Assembly: GCA_964252035.1 (NCBI GenBank)
Contig: OZ176203.1
Source: Podarcis erhardii
Taxonomy: Eukaryota
Reading direction: 5' to 3' (one strand)
Length of the DNA: 64,000 nt
Part shown: in pieces, positions 14,140-61,439 of the stretch
How the letters are laid out: every line of letters starts with the position of its first letter
How positions within the stretch are numbered: position 1 is the stretch's first letter
Made by a program: the position numbers and the translations under genes
Notes under the pieces: generated by a model
Database searches by the model: none
Seen by the model: only the letters and a program-made list of their open reading frames with translations
Told to the model about the DNA's origin: nothing

Positions 14140-14497
14140 GGACCATCGAACCTCTTGGGCTTGCTAATCAGAAGGTCGGTGGTTCGAATCCCCGCAATAG
14201 GATGAGCTCCAGTTGCTCTGTCCTGCCAACCTAGCAGTTCAAAAGCATGCCAGTGCAAGTAGATAAATAGGTACTGTTGAGACAGGAAGGTAAATGGCAT
14301 TTCTGTGTGCTCTGGTTTCCATCACGATGTCCCATTGCACCAGAAGTGGTTTAGTCATGCTGGTCACATGACCCAGAAAGCTGCCTGTGGACAAACACTG
14401 GCTCCCTGGTCCTGAAAGCGAGATGAGCGCCGCAATCCCATAGTTGCCTTTGACTGGACTTAACCATCCAGGGGTCCTTTACTTTTACCTTTTTACC
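14140..14497 (+). mobile_element. Sauria SINE (Squam1)
   Basis: B-box GGTTCGAATCCC, BovB-like 3' part, ACCTTT-type tail, 9-bp TSD TATAAAGTA (14131-14139, 14498-14506). Confidence 0.88.
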
Positions 14498-48305: not shown

Positions 48306-48777
48306 ATTTAAAATGTAGATGGATTTAATGTTGACTCATGACACATGGTATTTTATCAATAAAGATCTTATGTCAATGCCATGGCTAAATTGTGCTTTGG
48401 CTCATAACTGGTGCCATGGCTTACAATGCAAACAAGCCCAATGCAGTTTTCTTGAAGCACGGTCCTGTGCCTTTCTACTCAGAAGCAAGGCCCACTCAGT
48501 TCAGTAAGACTTACCGTACATCTAGGTAGGTGTTATAAGATTGCAACTTGGGACTCTGCATAGGTTCCAAAGTGGTGTACCAGTTTATTATTTTTTAGCT
48601 TACAAGGGGTAATTTATAGAACCAAAATCACACAAAATTCAAATAAAAGCCATTCAATGCTATTGTTGCAAAAGGTTTGATAGAATCACCTTTTTAGCTG
48701 TGAATAAATTAACCATCTCATTCTTTCTGATATTAATGTTCCTTTTTAGTTACTTTGAAATTTCCTTGGCAGGGAGA

Positions 48778-49063
48778 ATGTCTAGTACTCCAGTAGCTGT
48801 GGTGACTGGATCCAACAAAGGCATTGGGCTGGCCATCGTGCGGGCTCTATGCAAGAAGTTCACTGGGGATGTTTACCTAACAGCCCGGGACATCCAACGG
48901 GGCAAGGAGGCAGTGGCCAAGCTTCAGGAAGAAGGGCTGAAGCCACAGTTCCACCAGCTGGACATCACTGATCTGCAGAGTATTCAAACCCTCCGTGATT
49001 TCTTGAAGGAGAAGTATGGAGGATTAAATGTGCTGGTCAACAATGCAGGGATTGCTTTCAAAG
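48778..49063 (+). CDS. CBR1: CBR paralog A coding exon 1 (MSSTPVAVVTGSNKGIG...NNAGIAFK)
   Basis: ATG at 48778 within ORF 48700..49080; AAAG|GTAAAA donor. Confidence 0.95.
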
Positions 49064-50527
49064 GTAAAATACATTTATAGTCTTTGGCTGCAATCATGCA
49101 GTCTGGCTGCAGGTTAACTCTTCTTCAGGCTCCAGCCTTTGTCATTTTCTCTCTTGGTGAGTGGATGTGTGTCACTTTCTGGTGCTTCCTCACTTTAATT
49201 GCCTGGTTACCTGCACTATGAACAGGTTACTAGGAAGAATTGTCCAGAGTAATAGACAGAGCATTTCTAATTGCCAGCCGCAGAGTGTGGTGGAGCAGCA
49301 TAGCCATACCCACAGTGCTTCTGCTCATGCAGGCTGGGATAGAAGTTGAGGGGAGCAGGAAAAACGTCTAAACTGGCAAAGCAATCAGGTCCAGTGCCAT
49401 ATAGTGATGTGAGAGGCACTGGATCATGGTCCGGCTCAGCCCCATCACTAGTGAGGCTTTTTGTGGGACATCAGCTGTGGGAATCCTGTCAGTGGTACTT
49501 CCAGTGGGTTGATTGGAAAGCTCTGTGCTGGAAGAAGGAGGTTGGTGCCGTATCAAGGGCAGAGGATGGCTTTTGGGTGGACCCCTTCTAATACTTTAAT
49601 TGTAATGGTGTGCCATATCATCTGGATATAGTATTTTTTCTTATAAACTATTTATTTGTTTTATTGATGTTTATTCTCACCCTTTAAAAAGAAAATTTTC
49701 TAATGAATATTCAAAATAACACTAAGCTAATGAAGGAACAAAAGCAGGTTTTTACAAAGTTTATATTTTCATAATGTCCATTCTGATTTTTGTTTGCTTT
49801 CTCCCTGCCATCTGGCAAAAAGTTGCAGATACAACTCCATTTGCTATACAAGCGGAAGTCACACTGCGAACAAACTTTTTTGCAACAAGGGATATTTGCA
49901 GAGAATTGCTACCACTGATGAAACCTAATGGTAAGTGCTCCACACTGACTTTAGGGGAAAATATATTTAGATTTAGGCTGTAACCTTGCACTTAACTGGG
50001 ATCAAGGCCTATTGAACGCAACATGAGGTGGGGTGGAGGCAACAAGCTTAACTAAGGCTAGTTTCTTCTTAACATTTTCCCTTTTAATAGGCAGAGTGGT
50101 GAACGTATCTAGCATGTGCGGGGCTTCAGCGTTGTCCCAATGCAGCCAAGACTTGCAGCAGAAGTTTCGGAGTGACACAATCACTGAAGAGGAACTAGTG
50201 AAACTCATGGAAAAATTTGTAGAAGACACCAAGAAAGGAGTGCATGAAAAGGAGGGTTGGCCAAGTACAGCTTATGGCGTGTCCAAAACTGGATTAACGG
50301 TTCTGTCCAGAATTCAAGCAAGGCAGCTGAATGAGACGAGGAAAGGTGATGGTATTCTCCTGAATGCCTGCTGCCCTGGGTGGGTCAGGACTGACATGGC
50401 AGGTCCCAGAGCCCCAAAATCTCCTGATGAGGGAGCTGAGACTCCAGTGTATTTGGCCCTTTTACCCCCTGGTGCTGATGGGCCTCACGGCCAGTATGTT
50501 AGTGAAAAGAAAGTGCAGAAGTGGTAG
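48778..50527 (+). CDS. CBR1: Carbonyl reductase [NADPH] 1-like, paralog A (SDR family), 3 coding exons, 276 aa, intact
   Basis: Exons 48778-49063 (286 nt), 49823-49930 (108 nt), 50091-50527 (437 nt); GT-AG introns. TGxxxGxG (TGSNKGIG), NNAG, catalytic N113/S139/Y193/K197, CCPGWVRTDMAG. CBR1 versus CBR3 orthology is not resolved. Confidence 0.94.
49823..49930 (+). CDS. CBR1: CBR paralog A coding exon 2 (VADTTPFAIQAEVTLRTNFFATRDICRELLPLMKPN)
   Basis: 108 nt; AAAAAG| acceptor, G|GTAAGT donor. Confidence 0.94.
50091..50527 (+). CDS. CBR1: CBR paralog A coding exon 3 (GRVVNVSSMCG...VQKW*)
   Basis: TTTTAATAG| acceptor; YGVSK catalytic motif; TAG at 50525-50527. Confidence 0.95.
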
Positions 50528-52105
50528 TTGTTCAGTGTACACTGAATAATGCATTTGCAGTGTTACTACTAGCTTGATTACTAGCAGTAATAGTGCAAAA
50601 GCAGATGTGGACTCTTCCACTGGGATCTGCTGTAACAGTCGTGGCAGGCTCACTTGCAAAGGAAGAAAGTGTTTCATAAATGCTTCATATTGTCTGTTAT
50701 GCACCTGTGCAAATAACTATTTTGGTTTGGTGTGTGCATGTGGCAGTTGGTGAGCATCTTTTTGCTACATTTGCTCTTCCCCGGATTTGGGAAGCTGTCT
50801 TGGCTTAATGTGTATTTTCCAGCTATTTTGAATTATTTTTGTTTCACAATGTGTGAAAACCATTTCCTTTTTGAATTTTAAAATGTGTATACATGATTTT
50901 CTCTCCTGTGCAAGGCTGTTTTGTTTAACACAGAAATCAAGCCATTATAGCCTTCACTGCAAATATGAATGCATGAAATAAGTAAAATGGACATGATGGC
51001 TTAGCAAATTTAATTTGGGCTGCTGTGGTGGGGAGGGTGCACGTGGGCTGTATAAAGAGAACCAATTTCTACTCTTAAACCCCTAGAAATAATTCACTCC
51101 ACTGTTAGCATAGCAAAGATCCTCCAAGTTCAGGAAAACACAAAGGATCGTTATTACACATTATATAATTGTTAGAAAATAAAAGTTGAATGCTTTCTCT
51201 GTAAAAGGATCTCTTAACACCCGTACAAATGAAACTGAAACTAATATTCATGGATCTTTGTTTTTGATTAATAAAAATGTATTCTAAACAATATACATGC
51301 ATGCAATTTTCATATGTTTGATGACAAAGCACATATTTAAAAATAAAAGGCTTGACCATGTTTACCTCTGGTTTTTTTGTTATATTTTAAGGGGTCTGCA
51401 TAAAGCAGAAAGGGGAGAGATGCACTTATCCTGTATTGTTTTGTTTTTAAAAACTATACAAGTGATGGGGAAAATTGTGTTTTCTACATATAAATGATCT
51501 TATGAATGCCATATTATACAGAGCCATCTCAGTGACAATGGAAACACTACCTGTGGGAATAAATTCACCAGCAGTGCTGTACCACCTTCTCCCAATCAGT
51601 ACCAATAGACTTCAATGATTTTTAAAAACCAATAATACTTAGGCATTATTTTTGGAATAATCAATTAATTTTAATTTTGAATCTTGAGAAGTTGACCTAT
51701 CATCATACACAGTATGATAGGAATCACTTCTCCAAGTACTTGCCAAAACAGTACCATCCACACACAAGAAATAAGTAGCAGTTAGCTTGGGAAAAACTTA
51801 AGATTTGCAAAAGTGGGCTGGGGTGGGGGGGCTCAGTGGAGAAAATAGCCCAATGGGAACTTAAGTGGACATAATGCTGATTGTTGGAATGGAGGTGGGG
51901 ACTAGAATCCTGAAGTGGAATAGTCCATATGGCAACAATTAGCTGCAGATTCCACTTCCCAAGCAATGAAATGCAGGAGCATGTTTTGTTCATTTTGGTA
52001 AGCCTCCTTTTCTCGACTAATTTGGCAGCCCCACCTGCCCTTCTTTCTTACACACAGCCAGGGGCTGACTGGGCCTGTGACTGGCTTTGACCCTACTGCT
52101 GGGCT

Positions 52106-52932
52106 CCATGATCACTGCAGATGCTGACAGCAGTCCCAAAATTAAAAGAGGCCTGCTTCTTGGGAGAAAAGTGATGACAAACCTAGACAGCATCTTAAAA
52201 AGCAGAGACATTACCTTGCCGACAAAGGTCCGTATAGTTAAAGCTATGGTTTTCCCAGTAGTGATGTATGGAAGTGAGAGCTGGACCATAAAGAAGACTG
52301 AGCCAGTGTGGTGTAATGGTTAAGAGCGGTAGTCACGTAATCTGGGGAACTGGGTTCGCGTCTCCGCTCCTCCACATGCAGCTGCTTGGTGACCTTGGGC
52401 CAGTCACACTTCTTTGAAGTCTCTCAGCCCCACTCACCTCACAGAGTGTTTGTTGTGGGGGAGGAAGGGAAAGGAGATTGTTAGCCACTTTGAGACTCCT
52501 GAAGGGGAGTGAAAGGTGGGATATCAAATCCAAACTCTTCTTCTTCTACTACTGATTGCCGAAGAATTGATACTGTTGAATTATGGTGCTGGAGGAGACT
52601 CTTGAGAGTCCCATGGACTGCAAGAAGATCAAACCTATCCATTCTTAAGGAAATCATCCCTGAGTGCTCACTGGAAGGACAGATCCTGAAGCTGAGGCTT
52701 CAATACTTTGGTCACCGCATGAGAAGAGAAGACTCCCTCGAAAAGACCCTGATGTTGGGAAAGATTGAGGGAACAAGGAGAAGGGGACAACAGAGGACGA
52801 GATGGTTGGACAGTGTTCTCGAAGCTACAAACATGAGTCTGACCAAACTGCGGGAGGCAGTGGAAGACAGGAGTGCCTGTCGTGCTCTGGTCCATGGGGT
52901 CACGAAGAGTCGGACACGACTAAACAACAACA
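52106..52932 (+). mobile_element. 5'-truncated BovB (RTE) LINE, RT C-terminus and (CAA)n tail
   Basis: ORF track peptides SRDITLPTKVRIVKAMVFPVVMYGSESWTIKK and RRIDTVELWCWRRLLRVPWTARRSN…LRLQYFGH; (CAA)n tail; 11-bp TSD ACTGCTGGGCT (52095-52105, 52933-52943). Confidence 0.92.
52302..52550 (+). mobile_element. Squam3-like tRNA/MIR-derived SINE nested in BovB
   Basis: A-box GTGGTGTAATGG, B-box GGTTCGCGTC, CORE-like GGTGACCTTGGGCCAGTCAC, (CTT)n tail, ACTGA duplication at 52297-52301 and 52551-52555. Confidence 0.82.
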
Positions 52933-54379
52933 ACTGCTGGGCTGCCCTCCCAGTCCCTTTGGGCACCACCCATGGCTGCTTCTGCTAGTAAAACATGAAG
53001 CACCCAATTTTCATCAATTGTACCACTATCCACTCACCCTGCAGCCCTCTGTGCCATATCCCATACTTTTGTGGAAGATCTGGCAACTTTCGGCAGCACA
53101 GGGGGCTGCAGTGAAATAAGGAGATGAGCTTAGATGAGCAAAAATGCTTTCCATAATCTCAACTCTTCCGCTCACGTAATTTTATTTTCTCCTCATTTTA
53201 GTTACAGTACTGTACTTGTCTATAGGTTTCCCTTTCCTGACTTCCTCTGTTGCTTCATGTCAGATTTCAACTTCTTCTAGCCGCTAATCAACTTCATGGC
53301 CTTGGTGCTTCTTATCTTTGTTCCTTTTCCTCTATTCTCCTTAGCCTCTTGGCTAACCACAAATCTTCCGTTTATACCTCCCTTCCTTTGTTCTAGTTTT
53401 TATCTTCAAGGTTTATTTCTTGTGCTAACTTCTTCCCTAAGTAATTATTTTGTATTTTTATGTTGTGAACCACTCTGTGATCTTCAGATTGGCAGTGTAC
53501 AAATTTAATAAATAATACTAAACTCATTCTCTCTCTCGCATTGTCCTTGCATTGTCCCACCACCACCATTTTCTCTCTATGCCTAGGCTAATGCATGTAG
53601 TCTCTCTTTCTTCTTTTTACTTTGTTCAACCTTTGCAAAGTTTCCACACTCCCTCCAATTCCTCCTTCCCTTCTTTTCTTATTTTGAAAAATAAAACCCA
53701 GTACAAGTTCCTGTTTTCAGGCTCACCACTAAATACAGTAATAATAATAATGGTGAGCCTTCAAGCAGGAACTTATATTGGGTTTTTGTTGTTGTTTACA
53801 GCACCAAGCACATATTAGCCACATTATAAATGATGAATTATAATGAATTTGACACATATGAACTGTGCCATTTTTAGCTTGTTTACACATAGGTTTGAAC
53901 ACAGGCGCAAACTATTTTAACACATCTTCAAGTTTGTGTGAAGAGTGTGCACTTGTTGTGTTGTAGTTTGTGCATGTTGCTACACAGCTTGTACACAAGC
54001 TGAATGTAACTTGCAAACACCCCTATTGCAAGGACATTTAATTTAAGAAATGATCCACTTTGAACTCAGTGGGATTTATTTCTAAGTAAACATAAGGCTG
54101 TGGAAAGTGCTTTCCCCTTCCCTCTTCCTGAGGACATACTTGCAAACATAAAAGCTGCTTTTAGGTTTGTACGTGTCTCTTCTCCCATACACAGATAATA
54201 CTCCTGAATGTAGAATATGTTACCTAACTTCAGACTGTTGCATAAACAAACAAGAGGGCACAAAGCTAATACCCAGAGGAGCAGATATATCTTTGAGTTA
54301 CTCAACACTCTGCATCTGTTTTGTTTCAGATTCTCCTATAGGCTACATTCTAATATTCTCTCTCCTCCTTAAATGCTCG

Positions 54380-54511: not shown

Positions 54512-55092
54512 TCTTGTTCTTGTTCTTTGATTGCATGAACCTGCTCAATTCTGTTGATAATCTAAAAAACCTCCAGGGTAGATTATGGCCTCCCTGCTAC
54601 GTCTCTGTAAGTTGCAGAATAAAATAATGTGTAAAACAATGTTCAAAGGTCAGGAAGAGCCAATAGGCACACCCTGGGAATGGAGGTTTCAAAGCAATAC
54701 TCCAAACCACATGCTCCAACTCAGGCAGTCCTTCATCTTTGCAACAGGTATAAATATACTCATCCAGTGAAGTTGCCATTCCATGTGTCTGGCTTCAGAC
54801 AAAAAACAACAACAAAAAAACACCCTTATGCCACAATAAATTCACAGGTTTTTTTAAAGATGCCACAAGATTTTTTGTGTTTGCTGCAAAAAAACATGTT
54901 TATGGAATTACTCCAGCAAATTGTTTTTGAAGTTTTCTTGCTGATTATGCTATGCTACCCCAGAGTAAGTGCTTTCGGGTAATGCAATAATGCTGTTCTG
55001 ACGCCATACAGAAAACATGCTCGGTTATGTGGATGTGTTTCTTCCTAAGGTGTCTCCCGTCCTACCTGATCAGAATCCGCTTGGCAGAGAGG

Positions 55093-55381
55093 ATGTCTAA
55101 GAGCATTCCAGTGGCTGTGGTGACTGGCTCCAACAAAGGCATTGGGCTGGCCATCGTGCGGGCTCTATGCAAGCAGTTCAGTGGGGATGTTTACCTGACA
55201 GCCCGGGATGTGGAACGGGGCAAGGAGGCAGTGGCCAAGCTTCAGGAAGAAGGGCTGAAGCCACAGTTCCACCAACTGGACATAAATGACCTGCAGAGTA
55301 TCCGAACCCTACGCGATTTCTTGAAGGAGAAGTATGGAGGATTAAATGTGCTGATCAACAATGCAGGGATTGCTTTCAAAG
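55093..55381 (+). CDS. CBR1: CBR paralog B coding exon 1 (MSKSIPVAVVTGSNKGIG...NNAGIAFK)
   Basis: ATG at 55093 within ORF 55027..55569; AAAG|GTAAAA donor. Confidence 0.95.
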
Positions 55382-58300
55382 GTAAAAACAGTTCAGTTTC
55401 TGGAAAGAAAGTATACGGAGATCAGGTCTGCCTGGGAGCACCACAGTCTGATACAAAATGGTATTGTTGGTCCCTGATGAGTGGGAAGTTGAACTCACTG
55501 CAGTTACTTGGTGGTCAGGAAACTTTCATTCACCTTATTTCATATATTCTGGGCTTACCCCAGGGCTAAGAACAGATGCTGAGCTGAGCCCTCTGACCAA
55601 AGTTAAGAACTGGGTAAAAGTACTTTTAACAGTGTACTTTGGACACAATGCAGTAGTTAAATATTCGCCACACTGCTTGCGACTTTCATGGGTGCTGCAG
55701 CTCAGGGCAGCTGCATACATTACTGTTTTCCAATACAGAAAATGCATCAATAGGACTAAGCGTGAGAGCTGAATGTAAATAATCCAGTGTACCAATCTTG
55801 CATATGAGTACAGTGGTACCTCAGGTTACAAACGCCTCAGGTTACAAACACTTAGAGTTACAAACTCTGCTAACCCAGAAGTAGGACCTCGGGTTGAGCT
55901 TTGCCCCAGAATGAGAACGGAAATCGCGTGCCAGCGGCACGGCAGCAGCGGGAGGCCCCATTAGCAAAAGTGCGTCTCAGGTTAAGAACGGTTTCGGGTT
56001 AAGAACAGACCTCCAGAACGAATTAAGTTCGTAACCCAAGATACCACTGTATTCACTGCATGTACACATGTGCAACTTCATTTCTGATGGGCTACACTTG
56101 AACCTATGTTTCTTAATACACGATAAATTCTTTTGCATGCAGCAAAGAATAATCTGTGATGGAAAACTGCAAAACATATACAATTAATGTTTGATAAAAA
56201 TGCAATTTGTTTCTTGCATTTCCTGTGGAAACTATAATCAGAATAGTTAGATAATCAAACAATCATTCAGAAAAAGGTACTTTGCAGTTTGATTATTGGT
56301 TAGTTGCAGAGACAGAAGCAGCTAAATGTTTGTTAGTGATCTTTCTCACTATACAATACATAACTGTCCCATGCAGAAAGTAAGTAATGAAAAACACAGA
56401 GTACCTGGTGGATAGCTGGCAACTATCTATTATTATTACTAATTAGCAGTAGTAGTAGTAGTAATAATTCTGAATGAGAGGTGATACTTTTAGCCTGCTC
56501 TTAACTTTATTCTTGCACACAGAAACCATGGGTACACAGACATAAAATCAATTGTACAGTGGTATCTCGGGTTACATACGCTTCAGGTTACATACGCTTC
56601 AGGTTACAGACTCCGCTAACTCAGAAATAGTACCCCGGGTTAAGAACTTTGCTTCAGGATGAGAACAGAAATCATGCGGTGGCAGCGCAGCAGCAGCGGG
56701 AGGCCCCATTAGCTAAAGTGGTGCTTCAGGTTAAGAACAGTTTCAGGTTAAGAACGGACCTCCGGAACGAATTAAATACGTAACCAGAGGTACCACTGTA
56801 CATATTAACAAGGCAAATATAATTTCATGTTCTACAACAGAAATGAAAATTATTCCATCTAGATTTAATGTGGGTTTGTGTGTTACTGTTATTTTGTAAT
56901 TTAAACATCTGGACACAATAAAATATATGTCATTCCCTCTCTTGGCATGTACAAGCAGCCAGAACTGCGACAAACAATGCTAACTCAAGTGAAAGCAGAT
57001 GGTGTGGGAGCTTTGCACATCTTCAACATGTTTTTTTAAAAATTATGACATCCTAGACAGTTCTGACATGTGTGTTTGTGACAGCCACCCTAGGTCTTGT
57101 GCCATCTGTGGAGAGTGTGTTCCCGGCTAGCATAGAGTACACCCCTCTACTCAGCAGAGTCTCCCCCTTTAAACAATAGGTGCCACTAGATGAGGTGTAA
57201 ATATTTCCACAGGGCTGTCCTTTATCAGCCGGCCTCCAAATTTCCCTGAGGTCCCCTTGAAGCCTCGTAAGGTAGTGTGGTATTCTATCTTCCAAGCTTG
57301 AGGGTGTTAAAAATAAGCCAAGACCACGCAGGGTTATGAAACAAGTTCTAAAGTTTACTAAACCTGGAAAAATGTGGAGATTTTAGAAAAAGATATGCAG
57401 TGGAAAAGTTACAGAAAAGCAATATATTCCCTTTAAGGCAAAATGGATTAAACCACCATCTACTTTCCCTGGACGAAACAGTCCCTTAATCCAGGTTTAC
57501 AAAGTTTTTCCTTGTCAGGTTGAGTTCCACCTTGAACTGCCCATCTCCTACTTTTATATTGTTATGAGTTGGGAGGAGGGGAGGCTGTACGCCTGACCCC
57601 CTCTTCTAATCCCTGGATCCAGCACATTTTCAGTTACTGAAATGGCTGGCTAATGAGTCATTACGGGTAGGGAGTGGCTCTGTGCCAGAGGGCCAGGGTG
57701 GAGGGTGGAGTGATATGAGCTAGAAGCTGGGTGCAAAAGCTGCAGGCTGGAAAGTCAGAGAGAAAGCCAAGCCTGATTTCTGCTGGAATCCAAGGCTGTG
57801 GCTGTGGGAGAAGCAAAGCTCTCTTAGGGCATTAATGCTGTAAACCCCTCCATTGCCTCTTGGGCTTGCCAATCAGAAGGTCGGCAGTTCAAATCCGCAC
57901 AACGGGGTAAGCTCCCATTGCTCTGTCCCAGCTTCTGCCAACCTAGAAGTTCGAAAGCACACCAGTGAAAGTAGATACCGTATTTTTCGTCCTATAGGAC
58001 ACTCCGTCCCATAGGACGCACCTAGTTTTTTGGGGGGGAAATAAAGGGGGGGAAATTACCTTTATTTCCCCCCCAAAACCAGGTTGGGGAAACCGAACCA
58101 GGTCGAGGAACAGCAGGATGGCGGCGCTGCGCCTCCCTGCTGTCCCCCGAGCTTGTGGGGCTGGCCGATGTCTGCACGGCGCGCGGGGTGCTCTGCTTCA
58201 GAACGCCCTTCCCACCGGGCGGCAGGCTGCTATCCACAGTGTGGGGAGTCCTGCGGGGAACTCCTGCAGGGCTCCCCACGCTGCAGATGTTTGCCCGGCG

Positions 58301-59901
58301 TGTGGGGCGCTCCGCTTCAGGGCGCCCCGGGCGGCAGGCTGCTATCCGCAGCAAGGGGAGCCCTGCGGGGAACTCCTGCAGGGCTCCCCACGCTGCGGAT
58401 GTCTGCCTGGCACGAGGGGCGCTCTGCTTCAGGGTACATTTCGCGCCGGGCGGCAGGCTGCTATCCGCAGCGTGGGAAGCCCTGCGGGGAACTCCTGCAG
58501 GGCTCCCCACGCTGCGGATGTCTGCCCGGCGTGAGTGGCGCTCTGCTTCAGGGCGTCCCTCGCACCGGGTGGCAGGCTGCTATTCGCAGCCTAGACAGCC
58601 CTGCGGGAACTCCCGCAGGGCTGCCTAGGCTGCGGATATGTTCCCGAAGCGCCGGGCGCTCTGCTTTCAGCACGCCCCGCGCTCCGGGAAGCAGGCTGCT
58701 ATCCGCAGCCTAGACAGCCCTGCGGGAGTTCCCGCAGGGCTGCCCAGGCTGCGGATGTCTTCCTGAAGCCTGGAGAGCGAGAGGGGTCGGTGCGCACGGA
58801 CCCCTCTCGCTCTCCAAGCTTCAGCGAAAGCCTGCATTCACCCCATAGGACGCACCCAGATTTCCCCTTCATTTTTGGAGGGGAAAAAGTGCGTCCTATA
58901 GGGCGAAAAATACAGTAAATAGGTACCGCTGCGGCGGGAAGGTAAACGGCGTTTCTGTGCGCTCTGGCACGCCTCATGATGTCCCGTTGCCCCAGTAGCG
59001 GTATAGTCATGACTCGGAAAGCTGTCTGCGGACAAACACCAGCTCCCTTGGCCTGAAGTGAGATGAGCACCGCAACCCCATAGTTACCTTTGACTGGACT
59101 TAACCATCCAGGGGTCCTTTACCTATGTATATATACTGTATATCATAAAGACATCACAGCCTCTGCCATGCCTTATTCCAAAAGGAAACATGAACCCTTC
59201 ATTGATGCGTGAACCCCTGGTATTTTCTACTACTCAGAGATTGGGGTGGTGTGCAATAATATAGGTTCCTGTCAATCACATGAAGCACCTTAGCCAGAGA
59301 TGAGGCAACTCTCACATACCAAGGAGTTTTAATTAACTTGATATTTGAGCCTTGAGGTATTTGCTAGGTTTCCAAGTTAACCCTATAATCCCCCAAACAA
59401 GCAGACAGGTTATTGAACAAGTAAAATATACAACAGCTGGTTGGGGGTTGATGGGATAGTCTAAAACATCTGGAGGGCACCAGGTTATTAAAGGCTGTAG
59501 TAAGGTTTTCAAGAATGTTACAGCTGCACAATGTAATTTCAACTGACGTTGACCATAAGTGGACTATGTTGTTTGCCTTTTTAGTGTACGTGCTGGAAAG
59601 ACTGTGTGCATTTGTACCTTAATGCATATTTTTGTATTTCCATTTTCTTTGCCCAATAAAAAGTGGAGGACCCCACACCGTTTCCTACACAAGCAGACGT
59701 GTCCATGAAAACGAACTTCTTTGCAACCAGAAATATTTGCAACGAGTTATTGCCACTTATTAAACCACAAGGTGAGCTTTACATTTTCATCCTGCAGGAC
59801 TAAATATTGTATTTTTAAATAGTCACAACCCATCCTGGGACCTTATAGTAGGGCAGGTAGGAAATAAAAATGAATAACTATTAATAACAACAGACAAACA
59901 G

Positions 59902-59937
<36 letters not shown>

Positions 59938-59945
59938 TAATAATA

Positions 59946-59978
<33 letters not shown>

Positions 59979-61439
59979 TATTATTTATACCCCGCCCTCC
60001 CCAGCCAAGGCCGGGCTCAGAGTGGCTTACAAGCAATAATAAAAACAAGATGAATGATTACAAACTTAAAACCAAAAATAAAATACAACATTAAGATAGA
60101 CAGACAGACCAACTGAGCTTTTCAAGTCTGATCCTGTTCTTTACAGCCATCATGTAAAGACGATAGGATAGCACTCTTTATGTAGTACATGAAACAAGAG
60201 ACAAATAGAAGTTGAACTAAGCCAGATAGGGCTTAGTGAGGTTTATCACATGGATTTATTGAAGAAGAAGGGGCAGGAGGAGCAAACTGGATTTGTTTTC
60301 TGCTCTGTACGATACAATATTGTACAATCAGCAGCGTGTCAGATGATTCAGATTTCTAGCTATTTTGAGAAGCTAGTGAAATTACTGGCATCATACTGCA
60401 CTATTGATCAACTCTGAGTAACTGCTGCATTCTATCTTGAAATGTCCAAACATTGTATACAGTGCTTTTTTTCTGCATACCATTGAGTACCCTCAGAAAA
60501 AAGCACTGTGTGTATGTGTTAAATGCCACTGTGATAGCCTTCAGAGCTATTAAACTCAAACTACACAGCATATATATTTTAGATTTTCCTTCAACCCTTT
60601 CTTATTTTAGAATATCTCCATGGCATCATAGAAAGGTTTCTGTTCCTGTGTATGAAACTTGCTTATGATTAATTCTTCATTATTTACTTGCTGTATGACA
60701 CTTATTATTTGTACTTGCTCTGCAGAGTATTGGGTTGAACGCAATCATGGGCATAGCCAAGGGGGGGTGGGGGTAGCAATACAAATAAATTTGGGGTAAC
60801 AATACAAATAAATACAAATCTGAGGTTCTGCCCCCCTAACAAAAATCCTGGCTACACCCATGTACCCAATGTTAGTGTTACTCAGAGGGGACCCGTTATA
60901 AATAACCTAGGTCTGCCCAGTATGTCTACTTTGAGTGCAACTGAGTTGGATATGGCCCATTGGTTATTATGGAATTATCTTTCTTTTCTTTTTTTGTCAC
61001 AGGAAGAGTAGTGAATGTCTCCAGTGTCGTGAGTGTCCGGGCATTAGCCATGTGCAGCCCAGAACTACAGCAGAAGTTTCGGAGTGAGACAATCACTGAA
61101 GAGGAACTAGTGAAACTCATGGAAAAATTTGTAGAAGACACCAAGAAGGGAGTGCATGAGAAGGAGGGCTGGCCAAATACAGCTTATGGGGTGACCAAAA
61201 TCGGGGTAACGGTTTTGTCCAGAATTCAAGCAAGGCGCCTGAATGAGACGAGGAAAGGTGATGGTATTCTCCTGAATGCCTGTTGCCCTGGGTGGGTCAG
61301 GACTGACATGGCAGGTCCTAAAGCCCCCAAATCTCCTGATGAGGGAGCTGAGACTCCAGTGTATTTGGCCCTTTTACCCCCGGGAGCCGATGGGCCCCAC
61401 GGGCAGTTTGTTAGTGACAAAACGGTTCAACCTTGGTGA
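55093..61439 (+). CDS. CBR1: Carbonyl reductase [NADPH] 1-like, paralog B (SDR family), 3 coding exons, 277 aa, intact
   Basis: Exons 55093-55381 (289 nt), 59664-59771 (108 nt), 61003-61439 (437 nt); GT-AG introns. TGSNKGIG, NNAG, N114/S140/Y194/K198, CCPGWVRTDMAG (Trp as in CBR1). Confidence 0.94.
55811..56049. mobile_element. Tigger-like MITE, copy 6 (CBR-B intron 1)
   Basis: Same TIRs and body, TA TSD. Confidence 0.9.
56557..56798. mobile_element. Tigger-like MITE, copy 7 (CBR-B intron 1)
   Basis: Same TIRs and body, TA TSD. Confidence 0.9.
57077..57850. mobile_element. Possible LTR-derived sequence in CBR-B intron 1
   Basis: Starts TGTGACAG; minus-strand TATA-like (AATATAAAAG, about 57560) and AGTAAA (about 57355) in LTR order; the other boundary and a TSD were not found. 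Confidence 0.3.
57978..58915. mobile_element. Non-autonomous Tc1/mariner-pogo superfamily (Tc2/Kanga-like) MITE carrying an internal hairpin array
   Basis: TIRs CCGTATTTTTCGTCCTATAGGAC / GTCCTATAGGGCGAAAAATACAG; TA duplication at 57976-57977 and 58916-58917; subterminal CCCATAGGACGCACC repeats. Confidence 0.88.
58167..58760. repeat. GC-rich tandem repeat, about 5 units of about 119 bp, each made of two hairpins
   Basis: The GCAGGCTGCTAT(C/T)C motif recurs at about 58221, 58333, 58452, 58571 and 58690 (spacings 112, 119, 119, 119). Confidence 0.92.
59664..59771 (+). CDS. CBR1: CBR paralog B coding exon 2 (VEDPTPFPTQADVSMKTNFFATRNICNELLPLIKPQ)
   Basis: Not in the ORF track; read by hand. 108 nt, AATAAAAAG| acceptor, G|GTGAGC donor, in frame with exons 1 and 3. 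Confidence 0.93.
59904..59980. repeat. (AAT)n immediately followed by (ATT)n
   Basis: Read directly. Confidence 0.9.
59950..60095 (-). mobile_element. L2-type 3' tail with (ATT)n expansion
   Basis: TTATTTATACCCCGCCCTCCCCAGCC…CTCAGAGTGGCTTACA, the reverse of the L2 tail. Confidence 0.65.
60746..60862. mobile_element. Small hAT-like MITE in CBR-B intron 2
   Basis: Termini CATGGGCATAGCCA / TGGCTACACCCATG. Confidence 0.6.
61003..61439 (+). CDS. CBR1: CBR paralog B coding exon 3 (GRVVNVSSVVSVRAL...VQPW*)
   Basis: Long polypyrimidine tract plus TCACAG| acceptor; YGVTK; TGA at 61437-61439. Confidence 0.95.

What the first reader, a model, noticed from the sequence alone, without database searches (positions are those of the whole stretch)
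57978..58915. DNA-transposon MITE whose cargo is a tandem array of alternating pre-miRNA-sized hairpins
Seen: between Tc2-like TIRs are about 5 units of about 119 bp, each hairpin B plus hairpin A, giving about 10 abutting stems. Hairpin A, e.g. 58463-58519, is 57 nt with a 27-bp stem (1 mismatch, 2 G-T) and an AAC loop. Hairpin B, e.g. 58520-58575, has consensus CCCGGCGCGAGGGGCGCTCTG-CTT-CAGGGCGCCCCTCGCGCCGGG. The array is CpG-rich, has no transposase, and lies in a transcribed intron of CBR-B; palindromic units fold on either strand. Inference: a mobile structured-RNA or cruciform cassette. It could yield clustered small RNAs or endo-siRNA, seed methylation, or reflect hairpin-driven amplification. 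I do not know whether this family's internal structure has been described.
Basis: partly seen in the sequence, partly recalled or inferred. Interest (0 to 1): 0.75.

Follow-up and report, generated by a model that had tools for sequence, protein, structure and literature searches.

The report
Lizard mini-transposon carrying hairpin minisatellite
A 938-base non-coding jumping-DNA element in an intron of a wall-lizard carbonyl-reductase gene carries five tandem copies of a 119-base unit made of two palindromes; the structure is real and striking, but it is best read as passenger repeat DNA of a known kind rather than a small-RNA gene cluster.

Summary
57978-58915 is a 938-bp non-coding cut-and-paste transposon. 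Its 25-nt terminal inverted repeats match 23/25. The TA target duplication is proven against an uninterrupted SINE copy in the same window. It sits in a SINE in intron 1 of the expressed CBR1-like gene B.

Its core is a 119-bp x 5.1 minisatellite whose unit is two palindromes. All five A hairpins (z -7 to -10) and three of five B hairpins fold far better than shuffles.

It belongs to a multi-copy wall-lizard family with variable unit number. The scan has already flagged this family on other DNA of the same genome (at least 8 notes). Two follow-ups called it a known kind.

I read the array as passenger DNA:
- **Symmetry:** kept by replication template switching (three compensated pair changes between unit subtypes, one exact loop flip).
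- **Size:** changed by slippage.
- **Decay:** neutral in this copy (14 of 62 substitutions are CpG transitions, 6 wobble : 6 mismatch).

RNA-seq depth merely tracks genomic copy number and shows no discrete ends. Rfam gives nothing at threshold. The 3-5 nt apical loops are unlike Drosha substrates. Small-RNA output is untested.

Tandem-repeat MITEs and MITE-derived miRNAs are both known, so this is a new member of a known kind.

The parts
57976..57977 (.). left copy of the TA target-site duplication
   Evidence: joint 57975->58916, 2 shared letters; uninterrupted SINE copy has one TA
57978..58000 (+). 5' terminal inverted repeat
   Evidence: (I17, 25 nt incl. TA, 92%)
57991..58019 (+). two direct copies of the 12-nt motif CCYATAGGACRC (57991-58002, 58008-58019), a putative transposase-binding site
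   Evidence: 5 matches in the window, all in the element; 0.55 expected
58028..58078 (.). perfect 20-bp hairpin (G7/C7-rich) in the 5' arm
   Evidence: I18; DNA fold z -6.3
58110..58143 (.). short GC-rich hairpin in the 5' arm
58167..58760 (.). minisatellite: 5.1 units of 119 bp; each unit = hairpin B (~47 nt) + hairpin A (~74 nt)
58174..58221 (.). hairpin B, unit 1 (decayed, z -1.4)
58222..58295 (.). hairpin A, unit 1 (subtype 1)
   Evidence: z -7.3
58293..58333 (.). hairpin B, unit 2 (7-nt deletion, z -1.5)
58334..58407 (.). hairpin A, unit 2 (subtype 1)
   Evidence: z -8.5
58405..58452 (.). hairpin B, unit 3
   Evidence: z -4.2
   Evidence: (z -9.4 on +, -10.5 on -)
58524..58571 (.). hairpin B, unit 4
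   Evidence: z -5.6
58572..58645 (.). hairpin A, unit 4 (subtype 2; loop AACT at 58608-58611)
   Evidence: z -9.6
58643..58691 (.). hairpin B, unit 5
   Evidence: z -4.1
58692..58764 (.). hairpin A, unit 5 (subtype 2; loop AGTT at 58727-58730 = reverse complement of the unit-4 loop)
   Evidence: z -7.7
58763..58824 (.). 31-bp, 94% palindrome in the 3' arm; not detectably related to the array unit
   Evidence: I13; z -8.9
58837..58907 (.). terminal hairpin formed by an internal + strand copy of the subterminal motif (58842-58863, a direct repeat of 58008-58029) and the 3' TIR
   Evidence: (D3, I19)
58893..58915 (-). 3' terminal inverted repeat
   Evidence: (I17)
58916..58917 (.). right copy of the TA target-site duplication
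57795..59124 (+). host: a very high-copy SINE split by the insertion (about 57795-57977 and 58916-59124)
   Evidence: (depth profile, loose ends at 59124)

Best explanation
This is a non-autonomous cut-and-paste DNA transposon of the Tc1/mariner superfamily type: TA target duplication, 25-nt TIRs, four copies of a 12-nt subterminal motif and no coding capacity. It was mobilised in trans and landed in a SINE inside intron 1 of a CBR1-like gene. Its interior is a passenger minisatellite of five 119-bp units, each made of two abutting palindromes. I infer three things. (1) The palindromes were created, and are kept symmetrical, at the DNA level by intra-strand template switching between the arms during replication or gap repair. 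That process copies one arm onto the other and can invert the loop. (2) Unit number changes by slippage or unequal exchange promoted by these hairpins, possibly during the gap repair that follows excision. (3) The array spreads only because it rides between functional transposon ends. In this copy the array is now decaying neutrally, mostly by methylation-type CpG transitions. Shown: the transposon anatomy, the TSD, multi-copy status, unit-number variants, hairpin stability, compensated arm changes, the loop flip, the CpG-biased uncompensated decay, and the lack of conspicuous RNA. Inferred: the template-switch and slippage mechanism, trans-mobilisation, and the absence of function.
For: Transposon anatomy. 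TA TSD shown against an intact SINE copy and against thousands of SINE reads. Multi-copy family: in the same-species run X1 (unique flanking contigs with 0 differences), summed word depth is ~5e5-1e6 over the element's arms and 3e4-1.4e5 over the array, against ~100-130 on unique intron. Structural variants appear among copies: joints skip 173, 273, 385 and 598 bp inside the element, and the last (58162->58761) removes the whole array. Arm symmetry: 89.6% of cells are paired (94% in hairpin A). Five pairs changed on both sides, against 2.7 in shuffles. The covariation score is 0.130 against 0.098 (0/500 shuffles reach it), and slid controls pair only 35-49%. The compensated changes are transversion pairs (GC<->CG at alignment columns 69/107 and 74/102) that separate units 1-3 from units 4-5. 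Loop flip: AACT in unit 4 against AGTT in unit 5, an exact reverse complement, while the A.C mismatch further out in the stem keeps its orientation. Arm homogenisation and spacer inversion are the published signatures of template switching (PMC8604942 abstract, seen; PMC8794818). Neutral decay: 14 of 62 substitutions against the array consensus are CpG transitions (13 of 24 in units 1-3). In stems they give 6 wobbles and 6 mismatches on the + strand, so there is no strand-specific rescue. 53 of 70 consensus CpGs are retained. RNA: depth over the array is 0.5-11, on both strands, against 23-27 on the arms. This parallels the DNA ratio. There are no places where molecules begin or end, and nearly all reads carry the family-majority letters rather than this copy's. 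Precedent: tandem-repeat-containing MITEs with up to five ordered core-repeat variants and a palindrome at unit junctions (PMC3879986).
Against: No other full copy could be fetched, so unit number and order across the family rest on contig joints and on unchecked scan notes. The autonomous partner was not found, and the superfamily subgroup (Tc2/pogo) is untested. Five units give few independent events: essentially one subtype split plus changes in unit 5. The compensated changes and the two-transition loop flip could also arise under selection for a hairpin. Standard RNA-seq under-represents GC-rich perfect hairpins and cannot see 20-30 nt RNAs, so lack of signal is weak evidence. The RNA came from a species about 4% diverged from the window's. 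Scan notes (unchecked) report sequence-unrelated arrays of the same design in other MITEs and stems that stay paired between two species, which could point to constraint.
Confidence: 0.72

Rival explanations
1. The array is a source of small RNAs: miRNA-like, endogenous shRNA/siRNA or piRNA precursors. It would be transcribed as part of the CBR-B intron or from other copies and processed from the abutting stems, either as a by-product or as a self-silencing device of the family.
For: The hairpins are very stable on both strands. The element lies in a transcribed intron, and family reads occur on both strands. A human mariner-type MITE (Made1) gave rise to the mir-548 family (PMC1784062).
Against: The best Rfam score is 39.9 bits against a gathering score of 57. 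Hits are scattered over unrelated miRNA families on both strands, which is generic hairpin matching. Apical loops are 3-5 nt and the stems are near-perfect and GC-rich, unlike canonical Drosha/DGCR8 substrates (my knowledge of pri-miRNA features, not tested). RNA depth is proportional to genomic abundance and there are no discrete ends. CpG decay is uncompensated, with 6 wobbles to 6 mismatches. No small-RNA data were available.
Confidence: 0.15
2. The CpG-rich array acts as a CpG-island-like regulatory module (alternative promoter or first exon) or as a nucleation site for DNA methylation that affects CBR-B.
For: CpG o/e is 0.73 and GC 70% in a 0.26-0.30 background. A Podarcis muralis gene model (UniRef A0A670K7T9, peptidase S1) starts with 77 residues translated from array units of another copy.
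Against: The high CpG content is explained by youth: the array consensus has o/e 0.79 and this copy has already lost 17 of 70 CpGs by transitions. That implies germ-line methylation rather than a protected island. There is no pile-up of read starts and no strand-specific transcription from the element. The gene model is an automatic annotation and may simply extend an ORF into the repeat.
Confidence: 0.08
3. The hairpin chain is selected because it helps the element itself. For example, cruciform or fold-back extrusion could bring the two ends together, shorten the effective length for the transposase, or promote replicative gain of copies.
For: The whole element is a chain of about 14 hairpins from end to end. 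Scan notes (unchecked) report sequence-unrelated arrays of the same design in other MITEs of this genome (s1-220723).
Against: There is no direct evidence. The element arms are 5-20 times more abundant than this array at 90% likeness, and array-less joints exist, so the array is not required for spread. The B stems decay freely.
Confidence: 0.05

Closest known systems
Tandem-repeat-containing MITE-like elements (DTC84 of Donax trunculus; pearl family of oysters; DINE-1/MINE-2 of insects), PMC3879986
   Same: A short non-coding mobile element whose centre is a short array (up to about five) of core repeats. Repeat variants lie in a fixed order, unit number varies between copies, and palindromes are implicated in array length change. 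The flanks act as a 'cassette' for different internal repeats.
   Different: Those elements have an AA target duplication, an adjoining microsatellite and ~160-bp units with only a 12-nt palindrome. To my knowledge several are now assigned to Helitron-like elements. Here the ends are Tc1/mariner-like (TA, 25-nt TIRs), there is no microsatellite module, and the entire 119-bp unit is two long palindromes.
Made1 (human mariner-derived MITE) and the mir-548 family, PMC1784062
   Same: A TA-flanked mariner-type MITE whose palindromic structure folds into a pre-miRNA-sized hairpin.
   Different: In Made1 the hairpin is formed by the element's own TIRs (one hairpin per 80-bp element), and mature miRNAs are documented. 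Here the hairpins are an internal tandem array with 3-5 nt loops and no small-RNA evidence.
Template-switch mutations at inverted repeats (quasipalindrome correction), PMC8794818 and PMC8604942
   Same: It explains multi-base compensated changes, perfecting of stems and inversion of the spacer or loop without selection on RNA. The same three features are seen between unit subtypes and between units 4 and 5.
   Different: It is a mutational mechanism, not an element family. Its action here is inferred from the pattern, not reconstructed on a phylogeny.

Membership tests
Tc1/mariner-superfamily non-autonomous element (MITE) | TA target-site duplication | tested here: met
   TA on both sides; an uninterrupted SINE copy has one TA; joint 57975->58916 with 2 shared letters
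Tc1/mariner-superfamily non-autonomous element (MITE) | terminal inverted repeats | tested here: met
   25 nt, 92% complementary; pattern unique to the two ends
Tc1/mariner-superfamily non-autonomous element (MITE) | no transposase coding capacity, small size | tested here: met
   938 bp; internal ORFs are translations of the repeat with no Pfam family above cut-off
Tc1/mariner-superfamily non-autonomous element (MITE) | many dispersed copies in the genome | tested here: met
   summed contig depth over the arms is thousands of times that of unique flanks in a same-species run, with tens of distinct contigs per variant site; the depth is not an exact copy number
Tc1/mariner-superfamily non-autonomous element (MITE) | autonomous partner with matching ends and a DDE/D transposase | not testable with these tools
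   no Repbase/Dfam library; literature search for the TIR strings found only unrelated oligonucleotides
pearl/DTC84-type tandem-repeat MITE-like elements | central array of core repeats between flanking modules with inverted repeats | tested here: met
pearl/DTC84-type tandem-repeat MITE-like elements | AA target duplication and a microsatellite abutting the array | tested here: not met
   the TSD is TA and no microsatellite lies at either array end. It works like one but is not a member.
pearl/DTC84-type tandem-repeat MITE-like elements | unit number varies between copies | tested here: inconclusive
   contig joints skip 173-598 bp inside the element; other copies of 429-951 bp are known only from unchecked scan notes
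animal miRNA precursor / miRNA cluster | match to a curated family at its gathering score | tested here: not met
   best 39.9 bits against 57 (mir-142); 34 sub-threshold hits to unrelated families on both strands
animal miRNA precursor / miRNA cluster | about 35-bp imperfect stem with a sizeable apical loop and single-stranded flanks | tested here: not met
   27-bp near-perfect core plus a 5-bp outer stem, loops of 3-5 nt, and stems that abut or overlap by 3 nt; the criterion itself is from my own knowledge
animal miRNA precursor / miRNA cluster | discrete 21-23 nt reads with 2-nt 3' overhangs | not testable with these tools
   no small-RNA run was offered; ordinary RNA-seq shows no discrete ends

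The most novel reading that the evidence does not exclude
The alternating double-hairpin array is a selected module rather than junk. It could be a Drosha-independent source of endo-siRNAs or piRNAs that targets the family's own copies. Or it could be a cruciform-forming device that aids mobilisation. Either would explain why arrays of the same design but unrelated sequence are said to recur in several MITE families of this lizard, and why stems stay paired between species.
Probability: 0.1. Interest if true: 0.7.

Novelty: new member of a known kind. Interest (0 to 1): 0.3.

Why it matters
As it stands, this is a clean vertebrate example of a Tc1/mariner-type MITE carrying a palindromic minisatellite. 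It is useful for repeat annotation: such arrays get translated into gene models, as in one Podarcis peptidase model. It is also a natural test bed for template-switch mutation. The same short palindromes exist in many dated copies, so arm homogenisation and loop inversion rates could be measured. If the array turned out to yield small RNAs or to aid transposition, it would link minisatellite birth, transposon spread and RNA silencing in a vertebrate. Nothing found here requires that.

Tried and rejected
1. Fetching other copies failed.
- The TIR pattern gave 0 matches in genome contigs, viral contigs and metagenome contigs.
- A 19-nt array word gave 72 single matches in metagenome contigs. None extends beyond 24 nt, so they are chance matches and I analysed them no further.
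- The ORF-as-protein trick found one protein only.

2. Rfam gave only sub-threshold generic hairpin hits.

3. I tested whether the flank hairpins (58031-58166, 58755-58840) are diverged array units. No similarity exceeds shuffles (z <= 2.2).

4. ARAGORN finds no tRNA in the host SINE head. The SINE identity (Sauria-SINE-like) rests on my recollection only.

5. Literature searches found no description of this family. I tried the TIR strings, 'TcMar-Tc2 lizard', and squamate MITEs with tandem repeats.

6. I could not decide whether the insertion is present or absent at the orthologous site in related species. All joints across the site have 43-55 nt sides lying inside the high-copy SINE, so they cannot be assigned to this locus.

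7. Locus-specific expression could not be assessed. RNA reads on the element carry the family-majority letters at 58115, 58176 and 58672, so they come from other copies or from the other species' ortholog.

8. I checked whether the exon-2 reads come from the paralogous CBR-A exon 2. The two exons are only ~72-80% alike, so the reads belong to CBR-B.
Full report
**Observation.** The stretch 57978-58915 is bounded by 25-nt inverted repeats that match at 23 of 25 positions (I17). Their pattern occurs nowhere else in the 64-kb window.
- The element is flanked by TA on both sides.
- The flanks are the two halves of a very high-copy SINE.
- A second copy of that SINE, at about 14140-14480 of the same window, runs uninterrupted through the site and has a single TA there.
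- Reads and contigs from other SINE copies join 57975 to 58916 with two shared letters.

The insertion and its TA target duplication are therefore shown, not assumed.

**The array.** Tandem Repeats Finder reports a 119-bp period, 5.1 copies and 82% matches at 58167-58760.

**Hairpins.** The whole element folds at -681 kcal/mol on the + strand and -687 on the - strand. The z-scores against dinucleotide shuffles are -25 and -33.
- Each unit is a 47-nt hairpin B followed by a 74-nt hairpin A. Hairpin A has a 27-bp core, an internal loop and a 5-bp outer stem. Neighbouring stems overlap by 3 nt.
- All five A hairpins are far more stable than shuffles (z -7.3 to -9.6).
- B is significant in units 3-5 (z -4.1 to -5.6) but not in units 1-2 (z -1.4, -1.5). 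Unit 2 has lost 7 nt.
- Four further hairpins lie in the arms, so the element is a chain of about 14 stems.
- A 12-nt motif, CCYATAGGACRC, occurs four times, only in the element's ends. It is a plausible transposase-binding site.
- The 3' end holds a direct copy of the 5' subterminal segment (D3). That copy pairs with the 3' TIR.

**Context.** The element lies in intron 1 of the second of two CBR1-like genes on the + strand.
- In two stranded RNA-seq runs of a related species (about 4% diverged; X15 contig with 39 differences in 934), exon 2 has 37-61x depth and the unique intron 1-5x on the same strand.
- Those exon reads are not from the paralog, whose exon 2 is only ~72-80% alike.

**Family.** In run X1, whose unique contigs match the window without a difference, summed contig depth is ~100-130 on unique intron. 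It is 5e5-1e6 on the element's arms and 3e4-1.4e5 on the array.
- The tool warns that this is not a copy number. It still shows a highly repeated family whose ends are more abundant than this particular array.
- Joints inside the element skip 173, 273, 385 and 598 bp. The last removes the array exactly (58162->58761).
- The scan's own notes list at least eight other stretches of this genome with the same kind of element, 429 to 951 letters long. Two follow-up reports filed it as a known kind of repeat-carrying mini-transposon. These notes are unchecked leads.
- One protein search hit, a Podarcis muralis peptidase S1 model, begins with 77 residues that are translated array units from another copy. 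This also names the likely genus.
- I could not fetch further copies as DNA.

**What keeps the stems.** On the alignment of the five units, 89.6% of pair cells are standard pairs (94% in A).
- Five pairs carry changes on both sides, against 2.7 in shuffles.
- The covariation score exceeds all 500 shuffles.
- Slid controls pair only 35-49%.

The compensated changes are mainly transversion pairs (GC to CG at two positions, GC to AT at a third). They separate units 1-3 from units 4-5. The loop of unit 5 (AGTT, 58727-58730) is the exact reverse complement of the loop of unit 4 (AACT, 58608-58611), while an A.C mismatch further out keeps its orientation.

Homogenisation of arms and inversion of the spacer are the published footprints of replication template switching at inverted repeats (PMC8604942, abstract; PMC8794818). 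No selection on an RNA is needed to explain them.

**What breaks the stems.** Of 62 substitutions against the array consensus, 14 are CpG transitions (13 of 24 in units 1-3). In stems they produce six wobbles and six mismatches on the + strand, so neither strand's RNA is being protected.
- The array keeps 53 of 70 consensus CpGs.
- CpG o/e is 0.73 against a consensus of 0.79 and a background of 0.26-0.30.

The CpG richness is thus best explained by youth, and the decay pattern by germ-line methylation.

**RNA.** Depth over the array is 0.5-11, similar on both strands, against 23-27 over the arms. That ratio resembles the DNA one.
- No place shows many molecules beginning or ending.
- Almost all reads carry the family-majority letters at sites where this copy is private.

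This is what passive transcription of many intronic copies would give. Rfam gives 34 sub-threshold hits to unrelated miRNA families on both strands (best 39.9 against 57 bits), which is generic hairpin matching. No small-RNA library was available, so the small-RNA reading is unsupported but not refuted.

**Comparison with the known.** Short mobile elements with a central array of up to five ordered core-repeat variants, variable unit number and junction palindromes are described (DTC84, pearl, DINE-1; PMC3879986).
- Those have an AA duplication and an adjoining microsatellite, which this element lacks.
- It works like them but is not a member.
- Its ends meet every testable criterion of a Tc1/mariner-type MITE.
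- The Tc2/pogo label and the autonomous partner could not be tested.
- MITE-derived miRNAs are also known (Made1/mir-548, PMC1784062).

I found no published description of this lizard family. Repbase and Dfam were not available.

**Verdict.** This is a real, well-structured and recently inserted member of a multi-copy lizard MITE family carrying a palindromic minisatellite. It is a new member of a known kind. The most likely mechanism is selfish spread between functional ends, with DNA-level creation, symmetrisation and resizing of the hairpin units. Interest is modest, and functional readings together have about a one-in-four chance.

Noticed in passing
P0001 (UniRef A0A670K7T9, Podarcis muralis); compare window 58084-58710: An automatic gene model for a peptidase S1 protein begins with 77 residues that are a translation of this family's array units (69% identity to the ORF across the window's array). 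Either a mis-annotated first exon or a copy that really supplies a start.
   Followed up: partly
window 58608-58611 vs 58727-58730: The 4-nt loop of hairpin A is exactly reverse-complemented between units 4 and 5 (AACT vs AGTT), while a mismatch further out in the stem keeps its side.
   Followed up: yes
window 58837-58915: The last ~80 bp look like a miniature fold-back version of the element: an inner 5'-end segment (a direct repeat of 58008-58029) faces the 3' TIR across a 33-nt spacer that is itself a small hairpin.
   Followed up: partly
window 14140-14480 and 57795-59124: Two copies of the same very high-copy SINE lie in one window; the second is the MITE's host. Their 3' halves are highly similar, and RNA-seq depth on them reaches hundreds of reads with a strand bias.
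   Followed up: partly
window 48700-50527 and 55027-61439: Two tandem CBR1-like genes, three exons each. Their exon 1 and exon 3 translations are highly similar, but exon 2 is only ~72-80% alike at the DNA level. This is the subject of another note of the scan (s1-229653).
   Followed up: partly
window 52087-52988: ORFs with a reverse-transcriptase C-terminal flavour (LINE remnant, by eye) lie between the two CBR genes; not examined.
   Followed up: no
window 59902-59985: Adjacent (ATA)n and (ATT)n microsatellites in intron 2 of CBR-B; reads seem to be cut there.
   Followed up: no
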